Below are positions 3,148 through 41,143 of a stretch of 64,000 bases of DNA, in pieces. The stretch is from positions 62,001-126,000 of IMG/VR virus record IMGVR_UViG_3300046323_000587; one strand, written 5' to 3'. The notes below the pieces were generated by a model that was not told the DNA's origin, ran no database searches, and was given only the letters and a program-made list of their open reading frames with translations. Position numbers and translations under genes: made by a program. Position 1 is the first letter of the stretch. Each line of letters opens with the position of its first letter.

Positions 3148-3482
3148 AAGAACAATATTTTATAGCCGTAGTTAGTTTATATCATCAATATTTTAGAAAT
3201 AAATTAGAAAAGTACACTAAAATTGAAGCTCTTGAAGAATCTCTTACTAATAATTTTGAGTTATTTACAGAAGTATTTGTAAAAATATTGTTTAATTTAG
3301 GTCACGCACCTGAAATAGTTGGAGGAATTAGGTTTAAATCTCTTGATAAGGAAGATAAATATGTTACATTAGAATATTTACCTTGCAAAGCATTAACAGA
3401 TTTATTTTTAAGTAGCACTATTTCAAAAGCATACTATATTTCAAATATTAAGAAACTAAATACTATTATAAATAATGAATAA
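3144..3482 (+). CDS. Hypothetical protein
   Basis: 112 aa ORF overlapping both neighbours. Confidence 0.6.
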   Translation: MKEQYFIAVVSLYHQYFRNKLEKYTKIEALEESLTNNFELFTEVFVKILFNLGHAPEIVGGIRFKSLDKEDKYVTLEYLPCKALTDLFLSSTISKAYYISNIKKLNTIINNE

Positions 3483-3885
3483 ATTGGAGTTATTTAACTT
3501 GTCTTTAGAGAATTCTTGGGAAAATATTTGTATTGCATTAAATCATTTATTTGATAATTATTACAATGAATTACCTATTTTAGAAGAAAATGAAAGAAAA
3601 AAGCTAATTAACCAAGTAGAATTTTATGGTAAATTTTTATTAGATAAAGAAAATTTACCTAACTATTATACAATAGATTTATTAAAACACACTTCATTAA
3701 TTTCTCATTATATTTTAAAAGAATATTTTAAACCTGAAACAGAATTAAGTAGACAAAAGAGAGCAAATAAAAAAGCTAAGTTAATTTTTAACAGTTTAAA
3801 ATTAGAAGGTATCTCAATTAAATCAAATAAGAAATTTTCTAAAAAAATTAATAAAGAATTTAAATATAAAACTTACGAAGACTAA
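3475..3885 (+). CDS. Hypothetical protein
   Basis: 136 aa ORF with a basic C-terminus. Confidence 0.6.
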   Translation: MNKLELFNLSLENSWENICIALNHLFDNYYNELPILEENERKKLINQVEFYGKFLLDKENLPNYYTIDLLKHTSLISHYILKEYFKPETELSRQKRANKKAKLIFNSLKLEGISIKSNKKFSKKINKEFKYKTYED

Positions 3886-17018: not shown

Positions 17019-18257
17019 ATGGCATTAAATAAAAAAGGTTTTTCAGCAATAGAAATAGCAAATAAAGTAGAAGAAAAATTCAATAATGTAGTTGGTTTTT
17101 TATTAGCAGAAATTGAAAAAATTAACCCTACTCAAGAATGGTTATTAGAAAATAAATATCAAGTTCCACAAAATTTTGATTCTAAATATTTTTATAAAGA
17201 AAGAGAAGACCGTAGTGATGCAAATTCACCTGAACATATTGTTGGAAAGAATATTACTTTTTGTTTAAAGAGAGATAGAGGTCAATTGCTACCAGATGAA
17301 GTATTGATTGAAAATGATTTATTAAAACGTAAACAAAAACAGGGTGGTGTACTGACTTCTGCAAATGATATTTATTTAGAGAATTATTTAAATTTAGTTA
17401 AAACAACAGGATTTAAAAAACTACTTTCATTTCCTATTAAACCTTCTTTTAGAACTACAACGGACAATCCAAATAAATCTCAAAAAATCGATGCTTTTGG
17501 AAATACAAAATGGATAGAAGACAGTAAAATGGAGGACCCTAATAATTATAATGAATATTTTTCATCTACAAAAGCAAGAAAAGCTCTTTTTGGTGAAGAA
17601 GATTTAGTTAATTTCTTAATGAAAGTACTGGAATCTAAAAAAACTGATGAATGTTATATTGATCCTATTGAAGAGATAGTTAAAAAAAGTGCAACTAAAC
17701 AATTGGTAGTAAGTGATTTAGATATTATTGTAACTTGGTTATCAAAAAATCTTATTGAAGCTGATAAAACTAGAAAACCTTGTGTAGGTGTATTGACATA
17801 TAGAAATAAAACTAATTCAGATTTCTTGGATGTATTTACAAAAGGATTTGTTGCTCCTTCTTGTATTTTTAATCCTTATTTGATGGATAGTAAATCTAAC
17901 GGTAGATACGGTTTCAATGCTTTTATTAGAAAAGCTACATTAGGGTATAAAGAATATACAGCTATTCCTAATATGGCAGGATTTAAACAATCAGAGAAAT
18001 TTGTTTATTATATTACAGCAAAAGAACAAAAGATTGAAGTAACTGCTAAAAAACCAGCACCAGCAGGAACTTATCCAATTAATGCAGAAAAACCTACTTT
18101 TGAAGAGTTGTTGTTGAACACTTTTAATCCTGCTGAAAAAGTGAATCAAATTATTGCTGATCCTAATAAAGTTGTCCAAGAAATGAAACCTAACAAATTT
18201 GAAGGCCTTGATGATAACGAAACATCTAATTGGGGAACTATGCTTGTAGCTGACTAG
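17019..18257 (+). CDS. Putative ssDNA-binding protein
   Basis: 412 aa between the AAA ATPase and primase as in crAss-like phages, with an acidic C-tail; function inferred from position. Confidence 0.45.
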   Translation: MALNKKGFSAIEIANKVEEKFNNVVGFLLAEIEKINPTQEWLLENKYQVPQNFDSKYFYKEREDRSDANSPEHIVGKNITFCLKRDRGQLLPDEVLIENDLLKRKQKQGGVLTSANDIYLENYLNLVKTTGFKKLLSFPIKPSFRTTTDNPNKSQKIDAFGNTKWIEDSKMEDPNNYNEYFSSTKARKALFGEEDLVNFLMKVLESKKTDECYIDPIEEIVKKSATKQLVVSDLDIIVTWLSKNLIEADKTRKPCVGVLTYRNKTNSDFLDVFTKGFVAPSCIFNPYLMDSKSNGRYGFNAFIRKATLGYKEYTAIPNMAGFKQSEKFVYYITAKEQKIEVTAKKPAPAGTYPINAEKPTFEELLLNTFNPAEKVNQIIADPNKVVQEMKPNKFEGLDDNETSNWGTMLVAD

Positions 18258-20303: not shown

Positions 20304-22499
20304 ATGAAATACCAAGAAGAAGAAATTAATAGCATTTTAATAAGTAATTCTCAACCAATTTCACTTTATTTTAGTGAAGACGATAAAAATAAACTAATTA
20401 AATCAAAAGTAGATTCTGTTTATAGTAATCCTTATAGATGGTTAATAGAACTTGTAACTAATGGAATTGATGCTTGTAAAGAAGCTAACAAACCCATTAA
20501 AGTTGATTTAATTTATGATAATACAGATATATTAACTTTAAACGGAAACGGAAAAATTATTATTAGAGATTATGGTACAGGTATGTCTTTAGACAGAATG
20601 TTAAATAATTATACTGCTATAGGAAACTCTACAAAAGAAGATAATGAAGGAGCTATTGGTTTCTTTGGTATTGGTAGACTATCTGTATTAAAATATACTA
20701 AACTGTATGAAATAAACTCTTATTATCAAGGAACAAAATATTCTTTTTTAATGGGTTTACAAGATGTAGAGAGAGAACGTAGAGGAGAAAAATATATCAA
20801 TAAAGAATACACTCTTTGTAATATCTTTAACACAACTACAACAGAAGAAGATGGATTAGAAGTAATTGTAGAATTAAACAATTCAAAAGATATTAATAAT
20901 ATTACTTCATTTATTAATAAAGAATATCTTATTCTTCAAGAATTTGTAAATATCGTTAATATTAAAACTGATTTAAAATATAAAGAAGTATGGAAATCAG
21001 AAAATTGTAAAATACTAGAAAATCATACTCACGGAGGTTATATGTCTATCTCTTTAGGAGGAGTTTTATATGATTTAGATGACCATAAAGAAGAGTTGTT
21101 AACTTTATGCGAAAAAGACAAAGATTTAAGAGCTTTTTTAGAGATTTGTTTTTCTATTAGTTCAAATATAATATTTTTTGTTCCACTAAATAAAGTAAAA
21201 CCAACAGAATCAAGAGAATCTATTGATATTGGTTATACTAAAACACTACCAAATATTTTAGAAGTTGTAAACAAAGTAAAAAATGAAATATGTGATTATT
21301 TACTTACTGAAATTGAAAAGATAACTAATTTCTTTGAAATATTGCACATAATCAATTCTGGTTCTTTTAAAAATTCTTATATTTTAGCTAAATCTTTACA
21401 ATTTATTACAATCAATAAAAAGTTTGGAGACACTATTATAAAAGATTTAGAAGATTTGCTTAAAGTAAATTATAGATTATATAAAATATCAAATACATCT
21501 CAAATTCTTAGAAGAAATAGAAATCTATTTGAAAATTCTTGGAATAATACAGAACAAGGAAAACAATTAACTGGTATTGATGAAACTATTTATAAAGTTT
21601 CAGTTGAAAAATATAGTGATTGGGATATTCAAAAACCTTTAATTTATCAAGAGTTTTCTAAAAATGATTCTGGTAATATTTATAGTCAAATATTAACTAA
21701 ATATAATGTAAATACAGCCTATATTTTAAAAGAATCTTCTCCTATTATAACAACAACAATAGCTGATTTTTTTATTCCTTATACAATAGATGATTGTAAT
21801 AATTACAGTATTACTATTGACAATTCTAATAATATACCAAAACCTAAATCAGATAAAAATTATAATGTTGGTCATTATTGTTTCTATAATTCAGATGTAA
21901 ATTATACTCTTGATGTAATAACAGAACAACAATTTATTGATAATTATATCAACTTCTATTATATTTCATATAAAGAAAAAGATTCTTTAAATAAATTCTA
22001 TATTTCTACCGTTTTAAAATTAAATCCTTCTATTAAAATTTGTGTTATTTCAATGGATTTAATAGAGAAATTAAAAAGAAAAAATTTAATCAGTGATACA
22101 AATCATCTAAATACTGTCAGTATTTCAACACAACAAAATAAAGCTTATACAGCTTATATGGCTATTAAACCTATTATTGATAATATTTATATTTTATTAC
22201 AAAGCAACAAAATAAATTTTGGTAAATATACTGTTCCAGAGATTAATGAAATTAAATTTAAAGTAAATCATATAACTGAAAAATTAAATATAAGTTCTTC
22301 TGAATTATCTTTAGTAGACGCTTTTATTAAAATGAAAATTGTTGAATTAGATACTTCTTTGGTATTTAAATATAAAAAAGAATTCAATTATTATTTACAA
22401 CAATTAAGAACACTAAGCAAAAAAGATTTTAATTTCTTAGATTCTTTACATAATTCACTTATACTGATAGAAAGTAATAATCAAATTAATTTATTCTAG
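20304..22499 (+). CDS. rIIA: rIIA-like protein (GHKL/HSP90-type ATPase N-terminus)
   Basis: YSNP...ELVTNGIDA, IRDYGTGMS, GFFGIG, PTESRESI; adjacent to an rIIB-like gene. Confidence 0.8.
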   Translation: MKYQEEEINSILISNSQPISLYFSEDDKNKLIKSKVDSVYSNPYRWLIELVTNGIDACKEANKPIKVDLIYDNTDILTLNGNGKIIIRDYGTGMSLDRMLNNYTAIGNSTKEDNEGAIGFFGIGRLSVLKYTKLYEINSYYQGTKYSFLMGLQDVERERRGEKYINKEYTLCNIFNTTTTEEDGLEVIVELNNSKDINNITSFINKEYLILQEFVNIVNIKTDLKYKEVWKSENCKILENHTHGGYMSISLGGVLYDLDDHKEELLTLCEKDKDLRAFLEICFSISSNIIFFVPLNKVKPTESRESIDIGYTKTLPNILEVVNKVKNEICDYLLTEIEKITNFFEILHIINSGSFKNSYILAKSLQFITINKKFGDTIIKDLEDLLKVNYRLYKISNTSQILRRNRNLFENSWNNTEQGKQLTGIDETIYKVSVEKYSDWDIQKPLIYQEFSKNDSGNIYSQILTKYNVNTAYILKESSPIITTTIADFFIPYTIDDCNNYSITIDNSNNIPKPKSDKNYNVGHYCFYNSDVNYTLDVITEQQFIDNYINFYYISYKEKDSLNKFYISTVLKLNPSIKICVISMDLIEKLKRKNLISDTNHLNTVSISTQQNKAYTAYMAIKPIIDNIYILLQSNKINFGKYTVPEINEIKFKVNHITEKLNISSSELSLVDAFIKMKIVELDTSLVFKYKKEFNYYLQQLRTLSKKDFNFLDSLHNSLILIESNNQINLF

Positions 22500-22568
22500 T
22501 AAATATTCTAGTAAATATTTTAGTATCTCAATTCTTATTAATTCATTCATTTTAAACAAAATAATTCT

Positions 22569-23579
22569 ATGGTACAAATTTTTTCAGCAAATTTCAGCAT
22601 TGGTTCAACAGTAAAAGTGATTACAGCAGCACAAAATTATAATCTTAATATTAGAACAGAAGAAGATTTAACAACTAGTATTGAAATTAAATTTAGAATA
22701 GAGAAAGCAAATAAACATTATAAAAATAATAAAGGAGAGAAATATAAAAAACAATTAAATAAAATTATTGCTCTTTGTGATAAATTTAATACATTTAAAC
22801 AAATTCACTATTTAGATGAAAATTATTATATCAATAATAATTGTATCTATTATAAAGGGCTAGAAGAGTTCCCTATTACTGGTAAAGCATTAACTTATTT
22901 AAAAACTATTATTGATTCTAAAAATGTTGAACAAGTAAATAAATTTACAGCTTTTCATAAAAGATGCTCATTAAATAAAGGCGAAATTAAAAATGATGTG
23001 ATTATTAAAACTGGTAAAGAAGTAGTTCAAGAACTGTATGAATTTATCTTGACTCACAATACACCAGTAACAAATGATGGATTTTTATTGTTTAAAAGAA
23101 CTCTTAAATTTAAAGAAGGTTTTAAATATTTTATGCCAAATGAAGCAATTGATGTAATCGGAAATCATTTTGTATTTAATAGTGGTCAATTGGTAGATTG
23201 TAAAATTAATTGTCTAACGAATTTACCTTCTTCTTACAATGTACTTAAAGTATTCCAAGACTTAAACACTAATTTAGTTTCAGCTCATAAACATACAGAC
23301 GGAACTGATTGTGAGTGGTCTTTTGGTCAATATACTTATCCAGATAAATTAGACTACAATTCTTCTAATACTTGTTCTTCTGGATTACATTTTGGTACAG
23401 AACAAACTTTTGTAGGAGGTGATGGATATTTTATTGGTTTAGTAGATCCTGCTGATGTAATTAGTGTTCCAAAAGAATCAGGCACAGCTAAAATTAGAGT
23501 TAAAAGAGCTATGTTAGTTGGAATTACTACAAAAGATTCATTTGAAACTATTACTTTTGATCAAAGCTTTTCTAATTAA
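22569..23579 (+). CDS. rIIB: rIIB-like protein
   Basis: ELYEFI..TP.T.DG.L..K, CSSGLHFG, VDPADVISVP...KIRV. Confidence 0.8.
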   Translation: MVQIFSANFSIGSTVKVITAAQNYNLNIRTEEDLTTSIEIKFRIEKANKHYKNNKGEKYKKQLNKIIALCDKFNTFKQIHYLDENYYINNNCIYYKGLEEFPITGKALTYLKTIIDSKNVEQVNKFTAFHKRCSLNKGEIKNDVIIKTGKEVVQELYEFILTHNTPVTNDGFLLFKRTLKFKEGFKYFMPNEAIDVIGNHFVFNSGQLVDCKINCLTNLPSSYNVLKVFQDLNTNLVSAHKHTDGTDCEWSFGQYTYPDKLDYNSSNTCSSGLHFGTEQTFVGGDGYFIGLVDPADVISVPKESGTAKIRVKRAMLVGITTKDSFETITFDQSFSN

Positions 23580-23615
23580 TCTTCTTTAAAGAATTAAAAT
23601 TTACTCAATCATATT

Positions 23616-23653
23616 AATAACCTGTCAAGAGTTTCTTTTCAGGTTATTTTTTT
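23616..23653 (+). terminator. Intrinsic terminator
   Basis: aataacctg / caggttatt plus long T-run. Confidence 0.7.
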
Positions 23654-23677
23654 TATTAATGTTTTATTATTATTATT

Positions 23678-24118
23678 TTGAATAAGATTTGTAAGAAATG
23701 TAAACAAGAACAACCTTTATGTGAGTATTCTTTTGATTTTGAAGCTGCTAAATTTAAAGAAACTTGTAATACTTGTACAGCAAATAAAATCAAAGAGAAG
23801 AAAAAAGAACTTACCAAAGAAGAGAATCAACGATTAGCAAATTATTGTTATAATTACAATATAACAACAGAAGAATATTATAAATTAGAAGAATCTCAAC
23901 ATTTTTTATGTTCTATATGCAAAAAACCTACACCAAATAAATTTTTTTGTGTAGATCACGACCATAAAACTTCTAATGTTAGAGGGCTTCTTTGTAAAAA
24001 TTGTAATTTAGGTTTAGGTCATTTTAAAGATGATATTTCAGTAATGAGTAGTGCAATAGAGTATATAAGTAAAAGTAAAGAATATCAAGTAAACGGTATT
24101 AATTTAAAACGAAAATAA
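23678..24118 (+). CDS. Endonuclease VII-family (His-Me finger) nuclease
   Basis: N-terminal CxxC..CxxC; CSIC...VDHDH..VRGLLCKNCNLGLG; TTG start. Confidence 0.85.
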   Translation: MNKICKKCKQEQPLCEYSFDFEAAKFKETCNTCTANKIKEKKKELTKEENQRLANYCYNYNITTEEYYKLEESQHFLCSICKKPTPNKFFCVDHDHKTSNVRGLLCKNCNLGLGHFKDDISVMSSAIEYISKSKEYQVNGINLKRK

Positions 24119-30159: not shown

Positions 30160-30205
30160 AATACTACTCTTTCTATCTATAAATGAGATTAAGAGTAGTA
30201 TTTTT
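30160..30205 (+). terminator. Intrinsic terminator
   Basis: aatactactctt / aagagtagtatt plus T-run. Confidence 0.7.
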
Positions 30206-30256: not shown

Positions 30257-32068
30257 GTGAATACAATTACAATAAATATTGAGCCAGGAATAAAATACTT
30301 ATCAGAAAGTAAAAATATCAAACAACTACCTAAAAATTGCTTATTTGATAAAGGAAGAGTAGGATGTGGAGGAACCACCTTAGCAATTGAATCAAATGAA
30401 CCTTATGTTATTGCTGTTCCTTTTGTATCTTTAATAGAAAATAAAATGTTTCAACATTCTAATATATTAGGTATATATGAAGGAGTAAAAACATCTACAA
30501 TTAAAAACTATTTAAAGAATAACTCTTGTCCTATCATTATGGTTACTTATGATTCATTACCTAAATTAGGTAATTATATAACAAGATCAGAGTATAAATT
30601 ATTAATAGATGAATATCATTTATTATTTACACAATATTCCTTTAGAGATGAAGCCATAGATAAGCTATTGCAAGAATATCAACATTACAAAGAGTATTGT
30701 TTTATGACTGCAACTCCACTAGAAGAAGAGTTTATATTAGATGAATTGAAAGATTTAGATATAGTCAATGCTGTATGGGAAGATTCTTCTGATGTTACAA
30801 TAGAGTCAATTAAATGTTTAAAAGGAGTATTAAATACTACAATAGATTTAATTAATGATTATTTAGCTGATATAAAACATAATAAAGAAGGAAATCTCTA
30901 TTTATTTGTTAATAGTGTAAAATTTATCAAAGAGTTAATAAGTAATACAGATGTTAATTTTCAAAATTGTAATGTAATATTTTCTAAAAACAATAAAACT
31001 GATGTAGGATTAGATAGAGGAATTTTACCTTCTGATAAATTAGGTACAGTTAAACCAAAGAAGATTAACTTCTTGACTTCTACTGTATTTGAAGGTACTG
31101 ACATTTATGACGAGGAAGGTAAAATCTATATTGTATCAGACCCAAGTAAATCTAATACATTAGTAGATATTTCTACTTCATTTCAACAAATAGCAGGAAG
31201 AATAAGGAACAGTAAATATCGTAATCTTATAAGCCATATTTATAGTAATACTAGATATACTTCTCTTTCTTATCAAGATTTTAAAGATTTATCTGTAAGA
31301 GAAATAGAGTTAGCTAAAAAATCAACAGAAGCTTTTAATGCAATTCAAAAAGAAACTAGAACATATTTAATTGAAGCAGGATTAGGAAAGATTAATCAAA
31401 CTTATATCACTGTAAAAAAAGATTCTGAAATATATTTTAATCCAAATTTAGTTAAATTAGATATTTATAATTACAAAGTAAGTAAACATCTATATAAGAT
31501 CAGAGTAAACAATTCAGCAGATACTTCAACAAGTAATTTAACAAAAGAATGTACTAAATATAATTACAATGTTATTAACTTTGAACATAAAAGCGAAATT
31601 AAAATATCTCCAACAGATTTACCTGGGTTTAAAGATGTAGTAATAATGTTGAAAGAGCTACAAAATGGTACTGATGAAGAATCCAATGCATATAGAAAAG
31701 CAGCGTATTTAAGATTTTCTTTTTTAGAAAATGCAATAGAGAAACTAACTTTTGAAGGTATTGAAAAACTAAATTATGTTCAAACTAATGTTAAAAGGAA
31801 ATTAATCTCTTTATTAGATAGTAATCTTGAAACTAAAATATTCAAATTATTAAAAAGTAATTCAAAAATATCTTCTGGTAATTTTATTTCTTATAAAGAT
31901 TTAAAAGATGAATTTACTAAGATTTATTCTGAATTAAATATCAATAAAACAGCAAAATCTACTGATATTAAAAGTTTTTTTAATGTACAAACTATAAAAA
32001 AATACATAAATAAAAAACAAGAAGATGGAGTAATTATTATAAATCCGAAACCAATAATTAATTTATGA
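30257..32068 (+). CDS. SF2 (DExH) helicase-domain protein, possible replication initiator / origin-binding protein
   Basis: Degenerate Walker A GCGGTT, DEYH, TAT, STVFEG.D, QIAGRIR; basic C-terminal domain; GTG start. Confidence 0.7.
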   Translation: MNTITINIEPGIKYLSESKNIKQLPKNCLFDKGRVGCGGTTLAIESNEPYVIAVPFVSLIENKMFQHSNILGIYEGVKTSTIKNYLKNNSCPIIMVTYDSLPKLGNYITRSEYKLLIDEYHLLFTQYSFRDEAIDKLLQEYQHYKEYCFMTATPLEEEFILDELKDLDIVNAVWEDSSDVTIESIKCLKGVLNTTIDLINDYLADIKHNKEGNLYLFVNSVKFIKELISNTDVNFQNCNVIFSKNNKTDVGLDRGILPSDKLGTVKPKKINFLTSTVFEGTDIYDEEGKIYIVSDPSKSNTLVDISTSFQQIAGRIRNSKYRNLISHIYSNTRYTSLSYQDFKDLSVREIELAKKSTEAFNAIQKETRTYLIEAGLGKINQTYITVKKDSEIYFNPNLVKLDIYNYKVSKHLYKIRVNNSADTSTSNLTKECTKYNYNVINFEHKSEIKISPTDLPGFKDVVIMLKELQNGTDEESNAYRKAAYLRFSFLENAIEKLTFEGIEKLNYVQTNVKRKLISLLDSNLETKIFKLLKSNSKISSGNFISYKDLKDEFTKIYSELNINKTAKSTDIKSFFNVQTIKKYINKKQEDGVIIINPKPIINL

Positions 32069-32110
32069 TTTATTTCTCATAATAGAGTTTTTTAAAAAAC
32101 CAAATATTTT

Positions 32111-32313
32111 ACAAGGAAGTTTTTAATCAAGGGTATATAGTAACGGTAACGAATTAGAAATTTCCTTGTTTATTGTTAACATTTTTAAGAAATATAAAAA
32201 AATAAACTTTATAAAAATATTTTTATAATTTCCTAATTTTTAACAAATTATTTTACAAGGAATTTTTTGATTAAGGGTATTAAGGAACGGTATTAAATCA
32301 AAAAATTCCTTGT
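32111..32313. repeat. Two related long-stem hairpins (32111-32169 and 32255-32313)
   Basis: Stems ACAAGGAA...TTCCTTGT of 17 and 18 bp; both loops contain AAGGGTAT-N5-AACGGTA. Confidence 0.88.
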
Positions 32314-32397
32314 TTTTATTAAATATTTTAACATTACACTAATAAGTTAAACTTTCGATAATATTTTTATTATGGATAAATTAAATGAATGATATAA

Positions 32398-33999
32398 ATG
32401 ACTACATATAATGATAGTTTTCACCCATTATTTAATAGTAAACCTAAGAATAGTTTTGCTATAAAAAATACAGAAAAGTATAAAAAGAAAATATTTAAAC
32501 CAAAAGATTTATTTCCTTTTGGAAAATATAAAGGAGTAGAAATCTCTCAAGTTTATGGAGAAGATTTAAGCTATATCAGATATTTAGAAAAAAATGGTTT
32601 CAAATTCAATATGTCAGAATTGTTTACTGTTAATTTTTCTAGTAATTCTGAGATAAGATTAAATACACAACAGCAAGAGGCTTGTACTAAAATACAACGA
32701 TTTTTATTGTCAGAAGACAGAGAATTTCTTTTAGAAGGTGAAGCAGGAACAGGTAAAACAACTGTAATTAAATACGCTTTATCAAAAAAGAAAGGAGTTA
32801 TAGGATGTACAGTTTCTCATAAAGCTAAAATTGTATTAGGTAAAAGTTTAAACTGGGTTAATACAATAGCCTCATTGTTTAATTTAAGACCTTCTTTTGA
32901 TGATGAAGGAAATCAAATATTTAATAAATTAGATGAGAATATGATTACTGATAGTTGTAAAATATTAGTAGTAGATGAATGTTCTATGATTTCTCCTGAA
33001 TTAAGAAAAATGATTTTAGATTATACGTATCCTGATACAAAGATAATTTATTTAGGAGATAAATGTCAAACTCCTTATATTGATTCTAATAAACCATTAG
33101 ATAAAGATTCTCCTTGTTTTGCTGTTGTTCCTAATCATAGTTTAGTTACTGTAATGAGAAATGAAAATAACATTTCTTTAGCTAAACAATTAAGGAATTT
33201 AATCTTGAAATACAATGAAGACCAATTACCAATTGATTATAAATTAGATATTACAGAAACAGAAGATTTAAAAAAACTTTCTACTAAAGAAGATATTGTA
33301 GAACAATTTTCTTGGTTGATTGATAAAAAAAATGTCAATTCAGTTAAGTTAGTTGCATATAAAAATTCTGTAGTTAATAGTTTTAATAAAGAGATAAGAG
33401 AAAAGATTTTCAATAATCCTAAAACTTTTGAAATAGGAGACTGGATTATGATGCGTTCTGAATATGTTATAGACGCTAAACCTAAAAAAATTATTTATTA
33501 TAATGGAATGGAATTTATAATATCGTCTATTACTTCAAGTTCTTATGCTGGATATAAAGTAACATTATTAAATAAGGAAATTCCTGTATTAAAAAGAGAG
33601 TCTTATAATGATTGGGATAGTAAATGTTCTTTTTTAAAAAGAGAAGCTATTAAACTATCTAATAAAAAGAAGAAGTTAGTTAAATTAAATGAAGAAACAG
33701 GAGAATTTGATAAAGATAAAGCTACAACAGAAAAAGATATAAAGAAACTATCACAAGAAGTAATAGATGCTTGGAAACTGTTTTATGGTCATATAGATTT
33801 ATTTCCTAAATTGCAATTTGGTTATTGTATAACTAGTCATTTGTCTACTGGATCTACTTATTTAAACACTATTTGTTTAGAAAGTGATATTATGGAAAAA
33901 CACTACAAACCAAAAGAAGATTTAAAATCTATTAAAGAACCTCTACAATTACTTTATGTTGCTTGTTCAAGACATAAACAAAAGTTGTTTATAGGATGA
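32398..33999 (+). CDS. Dda/RecD-like SF1B helicase with small N-terminal FPFGKYKG domain
   Basis: GEAGTGKT, VVDECSM, GD..Q, YCITSH.STGSTY, YVACSR. Confidence 0.85.
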   Translation: MTTYNDSFHPLFNSKPKNSFAIKNTEKYKKKIFKPKDLFPFGKYKGVEISQVYGEDLSYIRYLEKNGFKFNMSELFTVNFSSNSEIRLNTQQQEACTKIQRFLLSEDREFLLEGEAGTGKTTVIKYALSKKKGVIGCTVSHKAKIVLGKSLNWVNTIASLFNLRPSFDDEGNQIFNKLDENMITDSCKILVVDECSMISPELRKMILDYTYPDTKIIYLGDKCQTPYIDSNKPLDKDSPCFAVVPNHSLVTVMRNENNISLAKQLRNLILKYNEDQLPIDYKLDITETEDLKKLSTKEDIVEQFSWLIDKKNVNSVKLVAYKNSVVNSFNKEIREKIFNNPKTFEIGDWIMMRSEYVIDAKPKKIIYYNGMEFIISSITSSSYAGYKVTLLNKEIPVLKRESYNDWDSKCSFLKREAIKLSNKKKKLVKLNEETGEFDKDKATTEKDIKKLSQEVIDAWKLFYGHIDLFPKLQFGYCITSHLSTGSTYLNTICLESDIMEKHYKPKEDLKSIKEPLQLLYVACSRHKQKLFIG

Positions 34000-34713: not shown

Positions 34714-34740
34714 TTTTTATATAGCAATCAATTCAAATTG

Positions 34741-34771
34741 AACCTGTGACTGATGTTGCAGGTTTTTTTTT
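34741..34771 (+). terminator. Intrinsic terminator
   Basis: aacctgtgac-tgat-gttgcaggtt plus T-run. Confidence 0.8.
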
Positions 34772-34844: not shown

Positions 34845-35402
34845 ATGAATAGATTAGATGTTTTAAAACAAAAAGTGGCTATTAATAAGCCAATGATTCA
34901 AAATCAAATGATGTCTCAACAAAGTGCTCCAATGGAAATGTATTCAGAAGAAGGTTTAGACAATGAAGAAGTAGAAGAAGTTTCAATGGAAGGTTTACAA
35001 GAAGATGTAATGAGTCAAGAATCTTTTGATGGGACGTATGATTTATCTACGTTTGCTTTATCTTTATTTACATTAAGAACTCAATTACATATTTGGCATC
35101 TTCAAACTAAATCATTTGCTGAACATAAAGCATTAAATAGTACTTATGATGATTTATTAGTATTGTTAGACAGTTATATTGAAAAAGCACAAGGTAAAAC
35201 TAACACTGTAATTAGAGTAGGTCATTTACAACCAAAAGAGCTTTGTGATTATCAACCTCAATATATGAGAGAATGTATTAGAAATACTTCACAAGAATAT
35301 CAAACGTTATTTCTTCAAATAGAAGGAGAAGATCTAAAGAATGTTATGGCTGAAATACTAGGTTTGTTAAATGAGTTAGAATATCTTTTAACATTGAATT
35401 AG
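34845..35402 (+). CDS. Ferritin/Dps-like phage protein (DUF5856-like) with acidic N-extension
   Basis: LHIWHLQTKSFAEHKAL..YD.L..LLD.YIE..QG and C-terminal YLLTL. Confidence 0.75.
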   Translation: MNRLDVLKQKVAINKPMIQNQMMSQQSAPMEMYSEEGLDNEEVEEVSMEGLQEDVMSQESFDGTYDLSTFALSLFTLRTQLHIWHLQTKSFAEHKALNSTYDDLLVLLDSYIEKAQGKTNTVIRVGHLQPKELCDYQPQYMRECIRNTSQEYQTLFLQIEGEDLKNVMAEILGLLNELEYLLTLN

Positions 35403-35415
35403 ACTTAAAATAAAA

Positions 35416-35445
35416 AATCCCTTATAAGTTATATTATAAGGGATT
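35416..35445. terminator. Bidirectional terminator between convergent gene blocks
   Basis: aatcccttataa / ttataagggatt with A-run on the left and T-rich sequence on the right. Confidence 0.75.
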
Positions 35446-40952: not shown

Positions 40953-41050
40953 TATATAAAATGATTTAATTATTCTTTAAATTATTTTTTAAATTGATTA
41001 GAGTGCAACTTAACTATTGTTCAATTATTATATATCTTAAAAAGCAATAA

Positions 41051-41126
41051 TATTTGATATGAGAAAAAATTTTTTTTAAGTAACACTAATACTTCAAAAT
41101 AAAAAAATTTTTTCTCATATCAAATA
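41051..41126. repeat. 26-bp perfect inverted repeat with 24-nt spacer
   Basis: tatttgatatgagaaaaaattttttt (41051-76) / aaaaaaattttttctcatatcaaata (41101-26). Confidence 0.88.
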
Positions 41127-41143
41127 ATTTTAACTAACAAAGA

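What the first reader, a model, noticed from the sequence alone, without database searches (positions are those of the whole stretch)
32101..32320. Twin hairpins with divergent stems and a conserved loop motif after the SF2 helicase: candidate origin, hairpin promoter or ncRNA
Seen: two units 144 bp apart, each preceded by caaat(t)atttt. Unit 1 stem is acaaggaagtttttaat/attagaaatttccttgt, where both mismatches are G.T wobbles. Unit 2 stem is a perfect 18 bp. The inner stem sequences differ between units yet both pair. The 23-25 nt loops share AAGGGTAT-N5-AACGGTA, i.e. two related heptamers 13 nt apart. This pattern suggests selection on both structure and loop sequence. Inference: a replication origin recognised by the adjacent helicase-domain protein, ssDNA hairpin promoters analogous to those of phage N4 virion RNAP, or a structured RNA.
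Basis: partly seen in the sequence, partly recalled or inferred. Interest (0 to 1): 0.7.

Follow-up and report, generated by a model that had tools for sequence, protein, structure and literature searches.

The report
Twin inverted repeats beside a helicase gene
Two hairpin-forming DNA repeats between two helicase genes of a 226-kb freshwater phage belong to a previously undescribed, conserved control element that travels with a herpesvirus-UL9-like helicase gene in many phages, and most likely marks where that protein starts DNA replication and/or controls its own transcription.

Summary
Two 59-nt hairpin units lie 144 bp apart, with 17-bp and 18-bp stems and 25- and 23-nt loops that share AAGGGTAT-N5-AACGGTA. 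They are the only copies in the 226-kb phage genome and fold far better than shuffled sequence.

The new result is comparative. [quoted passage not shown] It ends in a winged-helix-like domain and has more than 1,700 homologues. In many homologue loci the same kind of element sits next to the gene, usually 35-100 nt upstream and on the same strand. Each has a perfect 9-21-bp inverted repeat whose sequence differs between lineages, a T-run/A-run, and a conserved spacer core (T-run, AATC, GGGTAT, TA(T/A)AG). Some genomes carry 2-3 copies.

In this phage the two copies bracket an 85-bp stretch of 8% GC.

Best reading (confidence about 0.45): a DNA-level initiator site or origin module that contains a -10-like box. 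The main rival is a dedicated promoter/operator with no replication role.

An N4-type hairpin promoter, an intrinsic terminator and a known RNA family are not supported. The G.T-wobble argument for one strand does not hold. No binding, transcript or origin activity could be tested.

The parts
30257..32068 (+). Gene for a 603-aa SF2 helicase-like protein. It has a UL9/origin-binding-protein-like fold, a non-canonical motif I (GCGGTT, with no Lys at the GK[ST] position), DEYH, TAT and QxxGRxR motifs, and a C-terminal winged-helix-like domain at about residues 528-595.
   Evidence: Motifs are read from the translation. There is no Pfam, PHROG or NCBIfam hit. The AlphaFold model has pLDDT 86.5. 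The top Foldseek PDB hit is HSV-1 OBP/OriS, 9hgi_A, E 6e-9. AFDB hits include entries named 'Replication origin-binding protein domain' and plasmid proteins. The C-terminal domain matches the RFX winged helix at Z 5.5. More than 1,700 homologues were found.
32098..32229 (+). Tandem repeat unit 1 (hairpin H1 plus flanks).
   Evidence: Direct repeat D1, 132 nt, 72% identity to unit 2, spacing 144. Pairwise alignment.
32111..32169 (.). H1: inverted repeat with 17-bp arms (32111-32127 and 32153-32169) and a 25-nt spacer ('loop') of 40% GC.
32120..32136 (+). Conserved core of H1: T-run, AATC, AAGGGTAT. It is followed by a -10-like TATATAG and a second heptamer, AACGGTA, at 32142-32148.
   Evidence: Regex and PWM hits. 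nhmmer search with the family core, E 8e-4. Loop motif.
32170..32254 (.). 85-bp spacer between the two inverted repeats, 8.2% GC. Candidate DNA-unwinding element.
   Evidence: Only 13 places in the 226-kb genome are this AT-rich, which is 0.07% of 85-nt windows.
32242..32373 (+). Tandem repeat unit 2 (hairpin H2 plus flanks).
32255..32313 (.). H2: perfect 18-bp inverted repeat (32255-32272 and 32296-32313) with a 23-nt spacer of 35% GC.
32263..32280 (+). Conserved core of H2: T-run, GATT, AAGGGTAT. It is followed by TTAAGG and AACGGTA at 32286-32292.
32398..33999 (+). Dda-like SF1 helicase gene. Its ATG lies 84 nt after H2.
   Evidence: phrog_325, E 4.7e-68. Pfam AAA_30, AAA_19 and Viral_helicase1. 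No close homologue elsewhere.
30160..30202 (+). 12-bp inverted repeat with a 19-nt spacer that holds CTATAAAT, followed by a T-rich run. It sits 55-97 nt upstream of the 603-aa gene, the position the element occupies in relatives. It may be a diverged copy or the nrdB terminator.
   Evidence: Not significant in the core-HMM search.

Best explanation
H1 and H2 are two tandem copies of a conserved double-stranded-DNA control element that belongs to the gene cassette of a UL9-like SF2 helicase family.

Each copy has three parts: a lineage-specific inverted repeat whose arms end in a T-run and an A-run; an asymmetric, comparatively G-rich spacer; and, inside that spacer, a conserved core (T-run, AATC, GGGTAT, then a -10-like TA(T/A)AG).

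Most likely mechanism (inferred, not shown): the 603-aa protein recognises the element through its C-terminal winged-helix-like domain. Recognition could be of duplex DNA, or of the element extruded as a hairpin or cruciform with the core exposed. Two bound copies bracket the 85-bp, 8%-GC spacer, which melts. This gives entry to the helicase domains and to the Dda-like helicase encoded immediately downstream. On this reading the locus is an origin of replication. The embedded -10-like box may also supply activating or primer transcription, and autoregulation.

Shown here: the structure, its uniqueness in the genome, its conservation and covariation next to homologues, the fold of the protein, and the extreme AT-richness of the spacer.

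Inferred: binding, melting and origin activity.
For: 1. The element is real and unique in the genome.

2. It travels with the gene family.
- In 30 non-redundant homologue loci (201 kb), every core-HMM hit with E<1 lies 69-232 nt upstream of the helicase-like gene, on its strand.
- 11 of 32 loci have a perfect stem of 9 bp or more anchored at the motif, 9 of them with shuffle p<=0.01.
- Over 16 instances, 209 of 216 arm positions are Watson-Crick, with at least 13 different arm sequences.

3. The core is not a general promoter of this phage. In 226 kb only H1 and H2 match it.

4. The protein has the architecture of an origin-binding helicase.
- SF2 motifs.
- The best PDB match is HSV-1 OBP bound to OriS.
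- AFDB neighbours are named replication origin-binding protein or primase, and the best Swiss-Prot matches are encoded on extrachromosomal elements.
- The C-terminus is winged-helix-like.

5. The layout is origin-like.
- Two copies flank an 8.2%-GC spacer that is among the 13 most AT-rich places of the genome.
- L013 has three tandem copies with a 6.4%-GC spacer. L043 has two.
- In small (pro)phages this is the only recognisable replication gene.
- In small (pro)phages and in cultured distant relatives it is flanked by long non-coding regions.

6. There is precedent. UL9 binds inverted boxes around an AT-rich spacer, and also binds a hairpin form of OriS (PMC12543377).
Against: - No binding, unwinding, transcript or replication data could be obtained. 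Complex prediction did not fold the job and no RNA run was listed.
- Cumulative GC skew and gene orientation do not mark this site. The skew minimum and the divergent gene junction are at genome positions of about 205-210 kb. The hairpins at 94.1-94.3 kb lie 3 kb from the skew maximum and the convergence point. That divergent region also holds ultra-AT stretches.
- In relatives the element keeps a fixed strand and a fixed distance of about 35-40 nt to the ATG, and it follows a terminator-like hairpin. That is promoter-like behaviour.
- Small phages carry extra copies far from the gene and in either orientation.
- Not all homologues keep the inverted repeat.
- The P-loop lysine is missing (GCGGTT), so ATPase activity is uncertain.
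- The UL9 match is only marginally better than matches to other SF2 helicases. There is no Pfam Herpes_ori_bp hit. The winged-helix match is weak, Z 5.5.
Confidence: 0.45

Rival explanations
1. A dedicated promoter/operator with no role in replication. The 'loop' is the promoter core: a T-rich upstream tract plus a -10-like GG-TATA(A/T)(A/G) box, in several relatives an exact TATAAATA. It would be read by a phage-modified polymerase or an alternative sigma. The flanking inverted repeat is an operator, or a supercoiling-sensitive cruciform, that tunes it. In this phage two copies would drive the Dda-like helicase gene.
For: - The strand is fixed, the distance to the ATG is about 35-40 nt, and a terminator-like hairpin ends 10-15 nt upstream, so transcription of the gene has to start in or after the element.
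- Nearly every spacer has a -10-like hexamer.
- The canonical Bacteroidota TAnnTTTG box is absent upstream in 26 of 30 loci, so some non-canonical promoter is needed.
- One lineage encodes a small Sigma70_r2 protein nearby.
Against: - A promoter class would be expected in many copies in a 226-kb genome, but only these two copies exist.
- H2 ends 84 nt and H1 228 nt before the Dda-like ATG, not the 35-40 nt seen in relatives.
- In G001 and G003, extra copies point against the surrounding genes.
- This reading does not explain the conserved pairing of arms that differ even within one genome (the two G001 copies).
- It does not explain the 8%-GC spacer.
- It is not exclusive of the origin reading. 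T7, T4 and lambda origins use promoters (my knowledge).
Confidence: 0.3
2. A structured RNA made from the + strand. Candidates are a 3'-UTR or intergenic stabiliser, a processing site, a leaky long-loop terminator of the 603-aa gene, or a small non-coding RNA whose loop motifs bind a protein or another RNA.
For: - The + strand hairpins are strong (-16.1 and -21.7 kcal/mol; z -3.7 and -6.1) and both are followed by T-rich tracts.
- H1's two mismatches are G.U on the + strand.
- No canonical terminator follows the 603-aa gene.
Against: - No Rfam family matches, even at E<=10.
- The genome's clear terminators have short loops and G+C-containing stems.
- Relatives lack a T-tract after the right arm and have no room for a promoter upstream of the left arm.
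- Wobbles are split 6 to 6 between the strands across the family, which indicates DNA-level symmetry.
- The - strand of H2 folds as well as the + strand, z -8.3.
Confidence: 0.1
3. A selfish or neutral dispersed inverted-repeat element (MITE-like, or a recombination or packaging site) that merely tends to sit near this gene, duplicated in tandem here.
For: - There are several copies per small genome, in both orientations and with conserved terminal arms.
- Contigs of one lineage often break next to it.
Against: - The spacer core is conserved between lineages whose proteins are only about 45% identical.
- The position and strand relative to the gene are constant.
- No transposase was identified, and target-site duplications were not looked for.
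Confidence: 0.06
4. N4-type single-stranded hairpin promoters for a virion-packaged RNA polymerase.
For: - The phage has giant virion-protein-like ORFs on the opposite arm, one of which (over 3,288 aa) has no family hit.
- Conceptually, this is a hairpin that carries a recognition sequence.
Against: - The geometry differs. Stems are 17-18 bp and loops 23-25 nt, against 5-7 bp and 3 nt in N4 (my knowledge).
- There are only two copies, in the middle of a gene arm and next to replication genes.
- The same element occurs in 30-kb phages and prophages that are too small for such a polymerase.
- No RNA polymerase domain was detected.
Confidence: 0.02

Closest known systems
Herpes simplex virus 1 origin-binding protein UL9 with OriS/OriL
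   Same: - An SF2 helicase with a C-terminal DNA-binding part is the top PDB structural match.
- The cis site is built from inverted sequences around or beside an AT-rich stretch.
- It is able to adopt a hairpin form that the protein binds (PMC12543377).
- There are several origin copies per genome, and they lie in promoter regions.
   Different: - There is no detectable sequence homology (no Pfam PF02399 hit).
- The C-terminal domain has a different fold (winged-helix-like, with no RVKNL motif examined).
- Motif I lacks the lysine.
- Here the conserved recognition candidate lies in the 21-33-nt spacer and the arms vary. In OriS the boxes themselves are the arms, and the hairpin has a 3-nt loop.
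- The hosts are bacteria.
Iteron-type and promoter-coupled phage and plasmid origins placed next to the initiator gene (lambda ori, P4, T7 and T4 origins; my knowledge)
   Same: - Repeated sites lie next to the initiator gene.
- There is an adjacent ultra-AT unwinding stretch.
- Promoter-like boxes lie inside the origin.
- Copy number varies from 1 to 3 between relatives.
   Different: - The units are 45-70-bp inverted repeats with long asymmetric spacers and 100-150-bp spacing, not 17-22-bp direct iterons.
- The initiator candidate is an SF2 helicase-like protein, not a DnaA/RepA/O-type protein.
Stem-loop origins of rolling-circle replicons (CRESS-DNA virus nonanucleotide loop, pT181 IR-II; my knowledge)
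   Same: The stem varies and co-varies, the loop motif is conserved, and the element lies next to the initiator gene.
   Different: - No HUH or Rep_trans domain is present in the protein.
- The loops are much longer.
- The genomes are large dsDNA phages.
Phage N4 early hairpin promoters
   Same: A DNA hairpin carries the recognition sequence, with supercoil-driven extrusion as a possible mechanism.
   Different: The stem and loop sizes, copy number, genomic position and the absence of a recognisable virion RNA polymerase all differ.

Membership tests
UL9/OriS-type origin system | The initiator is an SF2 helicase (two RecA-like domains, motifs I-VI). | tested here: met
   DEYH, TAT and QxxGRxR motifs. 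Model with pLDDT 86.5. SF2 helicases at Z 14-16, and 9hgi_A is the top Foldseek hit. Motif I is atypical: GCGGTT.
UL9/OriS-type origin system | Sequence membership in Pfam Herpes_ori_bp (PF02399). | tested here: not met
   No hit for the protein or for 84 family members. Only neighbouring Atlas and AFDB clusters carry that family.
UL9/OriS-type origin system | A C-terminal sequence-specific DNA-binding domain. | tested here: inconclusive
   The last ~70 aa resemble a winged helix (RFX DBD, Z 5.5, rmsd 2.9 over 66 aa). Foldseek finds no significant match.
UL9/OriS-type origin system | Inverted recognition boxes flanking an AT-rich spacer. | tested here: inconclusive
   Each unit is an inverted repeat, but its spacer is G-rich (35-40% GC). 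The AT-rich stretch (8.2% GC) lies between two direct copies of the unit.
UL9/OriS-type origin system | The protein binds the site and the site supports replication. | not testable with these tools
   Complex prediction returned no fold for protein plus DNA. No wet-lab data.
Iteron-type origin | Several direct copies of a site next to the initiator gene, plus an AT-rich unwinding element. | tested here: inconclusive
   Two copies here, three in L013 and two in L043, with ultra-AT spacers. Unit size and spacing are atypical, and many relatives have a single copy.
Replication origin by compositional criteria | A cumulative GC-skew extremum or a switch of gene orientation at the site. | tested here: not met
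   The skew minimum and divergent junction are at about 205-210 kb of the genome. The site lies 3 kb before the skew maximum and convergence point. Skew follows transcription direction here, so this is a weak test.
N4-type hairpin promoter | A short stem (5-7 bp) with a 3-nt loop, several copies before early genes, and a virion RNA polymerase encoded (my knowledge of the family). | tested here: not met
   Stems of 17-18 bp and loops of 23-25 nt. Two copies only. No RNA polymerase domain in the giant ORFs.
Intrinsic (rho-independent) terminator | A G+C-rich stem, a loop of 3-8 nt and a following T-run. | tested here: not met
   Not called by the scan, which does find short-loop terminators at 34740-34765 and 35416-35445. 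T-rich tracts do follow H1 and H2.
Known RNA family (Rfam 15) | A covariance-model match at the gathering score. | tested here: not met
   No match at gathering score in the window. Only chance-level miRNA-precursor hits at E 0.34 and 1.2.
Bacteroidota sigma-A promoter | TTTG at -33 and TAnnTTTG at -7 (my knowledge of the consensus). | tested here: not met
   No TAnnTTTG in 32069-32397, and none within 160 nt upstream in 26 of 30 homologue loci.

The most novel reading that the evidence does not exclude
These elements are the origins of a widespread, undescribed phage replication system that is a bacterial-virus counterpart of herpesvirus UL9/OriS. An SF2 helicase-like initiator with a degenerate P-loop would recognise a conserved single-stranded core. 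That core is exposed in the long loop of a supercoil-extruded cruciform, whose stem is free to drift as long as it keeps pairing. The initiator would then open the adjacent ultra-AT spacer for a second, Dda-type helicase.
Probability: 0.25. Interest if true: 0.75.

Novelty: new variant of a known kind. Interest (0 to 1): 0.6.

Why it matters
The helicase-like family has more than 1,700 members in phages and prophages, mainly of Bacteroidota and Chlorobiota. It has no Pfam, PHROG or NCBIfam model and no assigned function. In many ~30-kb phages it is the only recognisable replication gene.

Linking it to a defined cis element gives a directly testable initiator-and-origin pair for a large group of environmental and gut phages. 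It would extend the UL9/OriS principle, an SF2 origin-binding helicase with a palindromic, hairpin-capable origin, from herpesviruses to phages.

It also gives a practical annotation marker: an inverted repeat with a T-run/A-run and an AATC-GGGTAT-TAAG core. It would supply candidate minimal replicons for hosts that lack genetic tools.

If the element turns out to be only a promoter/operator, it still defines a non-canonical promoter class for replication genes in these phages.

Tried and rejected
- Rfam at gathering score and at E<=10: nothing meaningful.
- tRNA/tmRNA scan: none.
- Small ORFs in the gap: only 20-25-aa chance ORFs.
- Sigma-70-like scan: fewer hits than in shuffles, so uninformative in this AT-rich DNA.
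- Close relatives of the phage: none. The only other contig with these genes is 100% identical, also across the hairpin region. There is no blastn hit in the phage collection. The Dda-like helicase has no homologue at E<=1e-30. No orthologous intergenic region could therefore be compared.
- Natural variation from metagenome runs: only short Logan contigs were available. The hairpins were identical where covered, apart from one unpaired-context variant (32257 A>T), so nothing could be learned about covariation.
- RNA runs: none was listed.
- Protein-DNA complex prediction: the job was not folded and gives no evidence either way.
- Covariance model: not built. MAFFT aligned the left arm and core but staggered the right arms because spacer lengths vary from 13 to 40 nt. 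Covariation was counted by script instead. Those instances were picked as hairpins, which is an ascertainment bias. The motif-anchored test is the less biased figure.
- General-promoter idea: PWM, regex and HMM scans of the whole genome, and strand-asymmetric k-mers upstream of 122 ORFs, gave no further copies and no shared promoter motif.
- G.T-wobble strand argument: rejected (6 against 6).
- Fold of the C-terminal domain: no significant Foldseek match, only a weak winged-helix match.
- Literature: no paper found on this family or element. Only the UL9 structural papers were useful.

Full report
**1. The observation**

- H1 has arms at 32111-32127 and 32153-32169. It has 17 pairs, two of them G.T on the + strand, and a 25-nt loop.
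- H2 has arms at 32255-32272 and 32296-32313. It has 18 perfect pairs and a 23-nt loop.
- The units are 144 bp apart. Each is preceded by CAAAT(T)ATTTT, and both loops carry AAGGGTAT-N5-AACGGTA.

This is not a chance feature.
- The arm pattern is expected 0.00 times in shuffles of the window and is found twice.
- It is found nowhere else in the 226,480-bp virus record that holds the window.
- Both units fold far better than dinucleotide shuffles as RNA on either strand, with z-scores from -2.3 to -8.3. They dominate the centroid fold of the whole gap as DNA.

The two hairpins are the best-conserved part of a tandem duplication of about 132-144 bp, at 72% identity.

**2. Setting**

The window is part of a 226-kb phage genome of 22-27% GC from freshwater metagenomes.
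- Genes run on the + strand from about 210 kb, through the record's start, to 97.4 kb. They run on the - strand from 97.5 to 208.9 kb.
- Cumulative GC skew follows this layout. Its maximum is near 97 kb and its minimum near 205-210 kb.
- The hairpins lie at genome positions 94.1-94.3 kb, 3 kb before the convergence point.
- Upstream genes are class I ribonucleotide reductase subunits. The downstream gene is a Dda-like SF1 helicase.
- The convergent arm encodes giant polyvalent proteins.

**3. The upstream protein**

The 603-aa protein has no Pfam, PHROG, NCBIfam or PDB sequence hit.
- It does carry SF2 motifs: DEYH, TAT and QxxGRxR. Its motif I is unusual, GCGGTT, with an invariant Lys five residues earlier.
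- An AlphaFold model built from 84 homologues has pLDDT 86.5. It shows two RecA-like domains followed by a C-terminal region of about 270 aa.
[quoted passage not shown] Other SF2 helicases score close behind.
- The best Swiss-Prot models are uncharacterised proteins encoded on an archaeal extrachromosomal element and a cyanobacterial plasmid.
- AFDB clusters beyond the protein's own family are repeatedly named 'Replication origin-binding protein domain' or 'DNA primase'. The protein-language-model neighbours agree.
- Folded alone, the C-terminal region has pLDDT 87.7. It has no significant Foldseek match.
- Its last ~70 residues superpose on the RFX winged-helix DNA-binding domain at Z 5.5 and rmsd 2.9 over 66 residues. 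That is suggestive only.

More specifically, the protein has the architecture of an origin-binding helicase.

**4. The comparative result**

The family has more than 1,700 members.
- They occur in ~30-kb phages and prophages, mainly of Bacteroidota and Chlorobiota.
- A 46%-identical paralogue lies at genome positions 22262-23968 of the same phage.

I scanned 74 distinct homologue loci, and then 26-32 loci that were non-redundant at 85% identity. Many carry a perfect inverted repeat of 9-21 bp with a 13-40-nt spacer next to the gene, usually from about -95 to -35 relative to its ATG and on the gene's strand.

Examples, given as arm length and spacer length:

| Locus | Arm (bp) | Spacer (nt) |
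|---|---|---|
| L114 | 13 | 29 |
| L115 | 11 | 32 |
| L113 | 21 | 13 |
| L020 | 12 | 26 |
| L035 | 12 | 22 |
| L043 | 13 | 33 |
| L091 | 12 | 21 |
| L008 | 16 | 22 |
| L058 | 18 | 28 |

- The arms differ between lineages (TGTTAC, TGTAAC, GACACA, TGCTAG, TGCTTA, CCTATA, CCTTACA, and ACAAGGAA in this phage), yet they always pair.
- Over 16 instances, 209 of 216 arm positions are Watson-Crick, 6 are G.T and 1 is a mismatch. Three to four pair types occur at each of the six positions next to the T-run.
- Those instances were selected as hairpins, which biases the count. A less biased test anchors on a motif found by expectation-maximisation in the upstream regions, with no reference to pairing. 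In that test, 11 of 32 loci have a perfect stem of 9 bp or more at the motif, and 9 of them have shuffle p<=0.01.

The motif is: left arm, T5-7, (A/C)AT(C/T), 1-4 nt, GGT, 1-3 nt, TA(T/A)A(G/A), then an A-rich run that forms the right arm. H1 (TTTTTAATCAAGGGTATATAG) and H2 (TTTTTTGATTAAGGGTATTAAG) fit it.

A profile HMM of this core was run over 201 kb of representative loci. Every hit with E<1 lies 69-232 nt upstream of the gene, on its strand. Most of these hits are the seed sequences themselves. The new ones are two further tandem copies in L013.

In the focal genome only H1 and H2 are significant.

**5. Copy number and layout**

- L013 has three copies upstream of the gene. The last two are identical and 102 bp apart, with a spacer of 6.4% GC.
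- L043 has two copies.
- The complete 31-kb phage G003 has three copies: one before the helicase-like gene and two elsewhere, one in each orientation.
- G001 has two copies that share a 29-nt spacer core but have different arms.
- In the focal phage the 85 bp between H1 and H2 are 8.2% GC. That is one of only 13 such places in 226 kb, or 0.07% of 85-nt windows. The loops are 35-40% GC against 25% for the genome.

**6. What the element is not**

- *Not a known RNA family*.
- *Not an ordinary terminator.* The clear terminators of this genome have short loops, and relatives have no T-tract after the right arm.
- *Not a canonical Bacteroidota promoter.* No TAnnTTTG is present.
- *Not a general promoter of this phage.* It has only two copies.
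- *Not an N4-type promoter.* The geometry, copy number and position are wrong, and the element occurs in 30-kb phages.
- *Not strand-specific.* G.T pairs fall 6 times on the motif strand (H1, L113, G001 copy 2) and 6 times on the other strand (G003 copies 2 and 3). The symmetry is at the DNA level.

**7. Interpretation**

The element is a cis-acting DNA module that is inherited together with this helicase-like gene. Two readings remain, and they are not exclusive.

*(a) Initiator site or origin.*
- The protein has an origin-binding-helicase architecture.
- It is the only recognisable replication gene in small relatives.
- In small and in cultured distant relatives it is flanked by long non-coding, often divergent regions.
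- The element can be repeated in tandem around ultra-AT DNA.
- It is specific to this gene rather than being a general signal.
- UL9/OriS is a precedent for inverted sites, an AT spacer and a hairpin form that the protein recognises (PMC12543377).

*(b) Dedicated promoter/operator.*
- The strand is fixed, the distance to the ATG is about 35-40 nt, and a terminator-like hairpin lies 10-15 nt upstream.
- Almost every spacer holds a -10-like hexamer, in some an exact TATAAATA.

Against (a): GC skew and gene orientation point to the divergent junction near 209 kb rather than to this site. That test is confounded by transcription.

Against (b): the copy number in this genome, the longer distance to the Dda-like ATG, copies that point against the surrounding genes, and the conserved pairing of variable arms.

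I rate (a), possibly with (b) built in, at 0.45. I rate (b) alone at 0.30, an RNA role at 0.10, and other readings as minor. That the element is a real, selected element linked to this gene family I rate above 0.85.

**8. Novelty**

I found no description of this helicase family or of the element in the literature I could search. The only cultured-phage homologues are 26-27% identical and are annotated as hypothetical or 'DEAD-like helicase'.

In kind it resembles known origin or promoter modules placed next to initiator genes. The combination is a new variant: an SF2 origin-binding-like protein, covarying arms, and a long conserved asymmetric spacer.

No experiment could be run. The decisive tests are listed separately.

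Noticed in passing
window 41049-41128: The strongest inverted repeat in the window: 28-bp arms with one mismatch and a 24-nt spacer. It lies between the 478-aa and 1824-aa genes of the - strand arm, 16 nt after one stop codon and 97 nt before the next ATG. Read on the - strand, its spacer (T-run, then ATTTTGAAGTATTAG) resembles the spacer of the L020/G003 variant of the element (ATTTTGTAGTAAGAT).
   Followed up: partly
genome C1 22262-23968 (outside the window; window = C1 62001-126000): The same phage has a second, 46%-identical copy of the helicase-like gene (P0034). About 30-62 nt before its ATG is a small 7-bp inverted repeat (TAACTTT / AAAGTTA) around GTAGGTATAAAAT, a miniature of the element. 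Large inverted repeats also lie at C1 20312-20404 (30 bp arms, 33-nt spacer holding ...CTAAGATAAAAAG) and at 20779-20855.
   Followed up: partly
window 30353-30379 (residues 33-41 of the 603-aa protein): Motif I of the helicase-like family reads G-x-V-G-C-G-G-T-T. The canonical P-loop lysine is replaced by Gly in all 84 aligned members, and there is an invariant Lys at residue 32. The family may be a non-canonical or inactive ATPase.
   Followed up: no
window 35478-63989, - strand: A run of giant ORFs (1824, 478, 2342, 1446 and over 3288 aa) that look like polyvalent proteins. Domains found: PD-(D/E)XK nuclease; a Dda/PIF1-like helicase plus ART-PolyVal; a DprA-like domain plus a 2OG-Fe(II) oxygenase. 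The ORF of over 3288 aa has no family hit at all.
   Followed up: partly
window 35416-35445: A bidirectional terminator-like hairpin (12-bp stem, 6-nt loop, T-runs on both strands) sits exactly where the + and - gene arms converge. This coincides with the cumulative GC-skew maximum.
   Followed up: no
genome C1 208897-210034: A 1.1-kb divergent non-coding region at the GC-skew minimum that contains two ultra-AT stretches (208896-208985 and 209356-209470). By composition it is a rival candidate for an origin or an early control region.
   Followed up: no
L120/L121 (G003, a 31-kb phage with direct terminal repeats): The terminase large subunit and the tape-measure protein are each split over adjacent ORFs under code 11. 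This suggests stop-codon reassignment in this relative. Some of its apparently non-coding stretches, including those around the extra copies of the element, may therefore be coding.
   Followed up: no
L116/L117 (G001), e.g. 3175-3276, 3297-3532, 18196-18247, 20996-21237: This 31-kb phage carries several further families of repeated intergenic hairpins and direct repeats (CAGTCCTGTAGTCTTTT and GTATATTAGATAGCTGT types). They are concentrated in the long non-coding regions on both sides of the helicase-like gene and in a 1.3-kb gap at 20.2-21.5 kb.
   Followed up: no
window 34845-35402: A 185-aa protein with DUF5856 and phrog_858 ('starvation-inducible transcriptional regulator') is the last gene of the + strand arm.
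   Followed up: no
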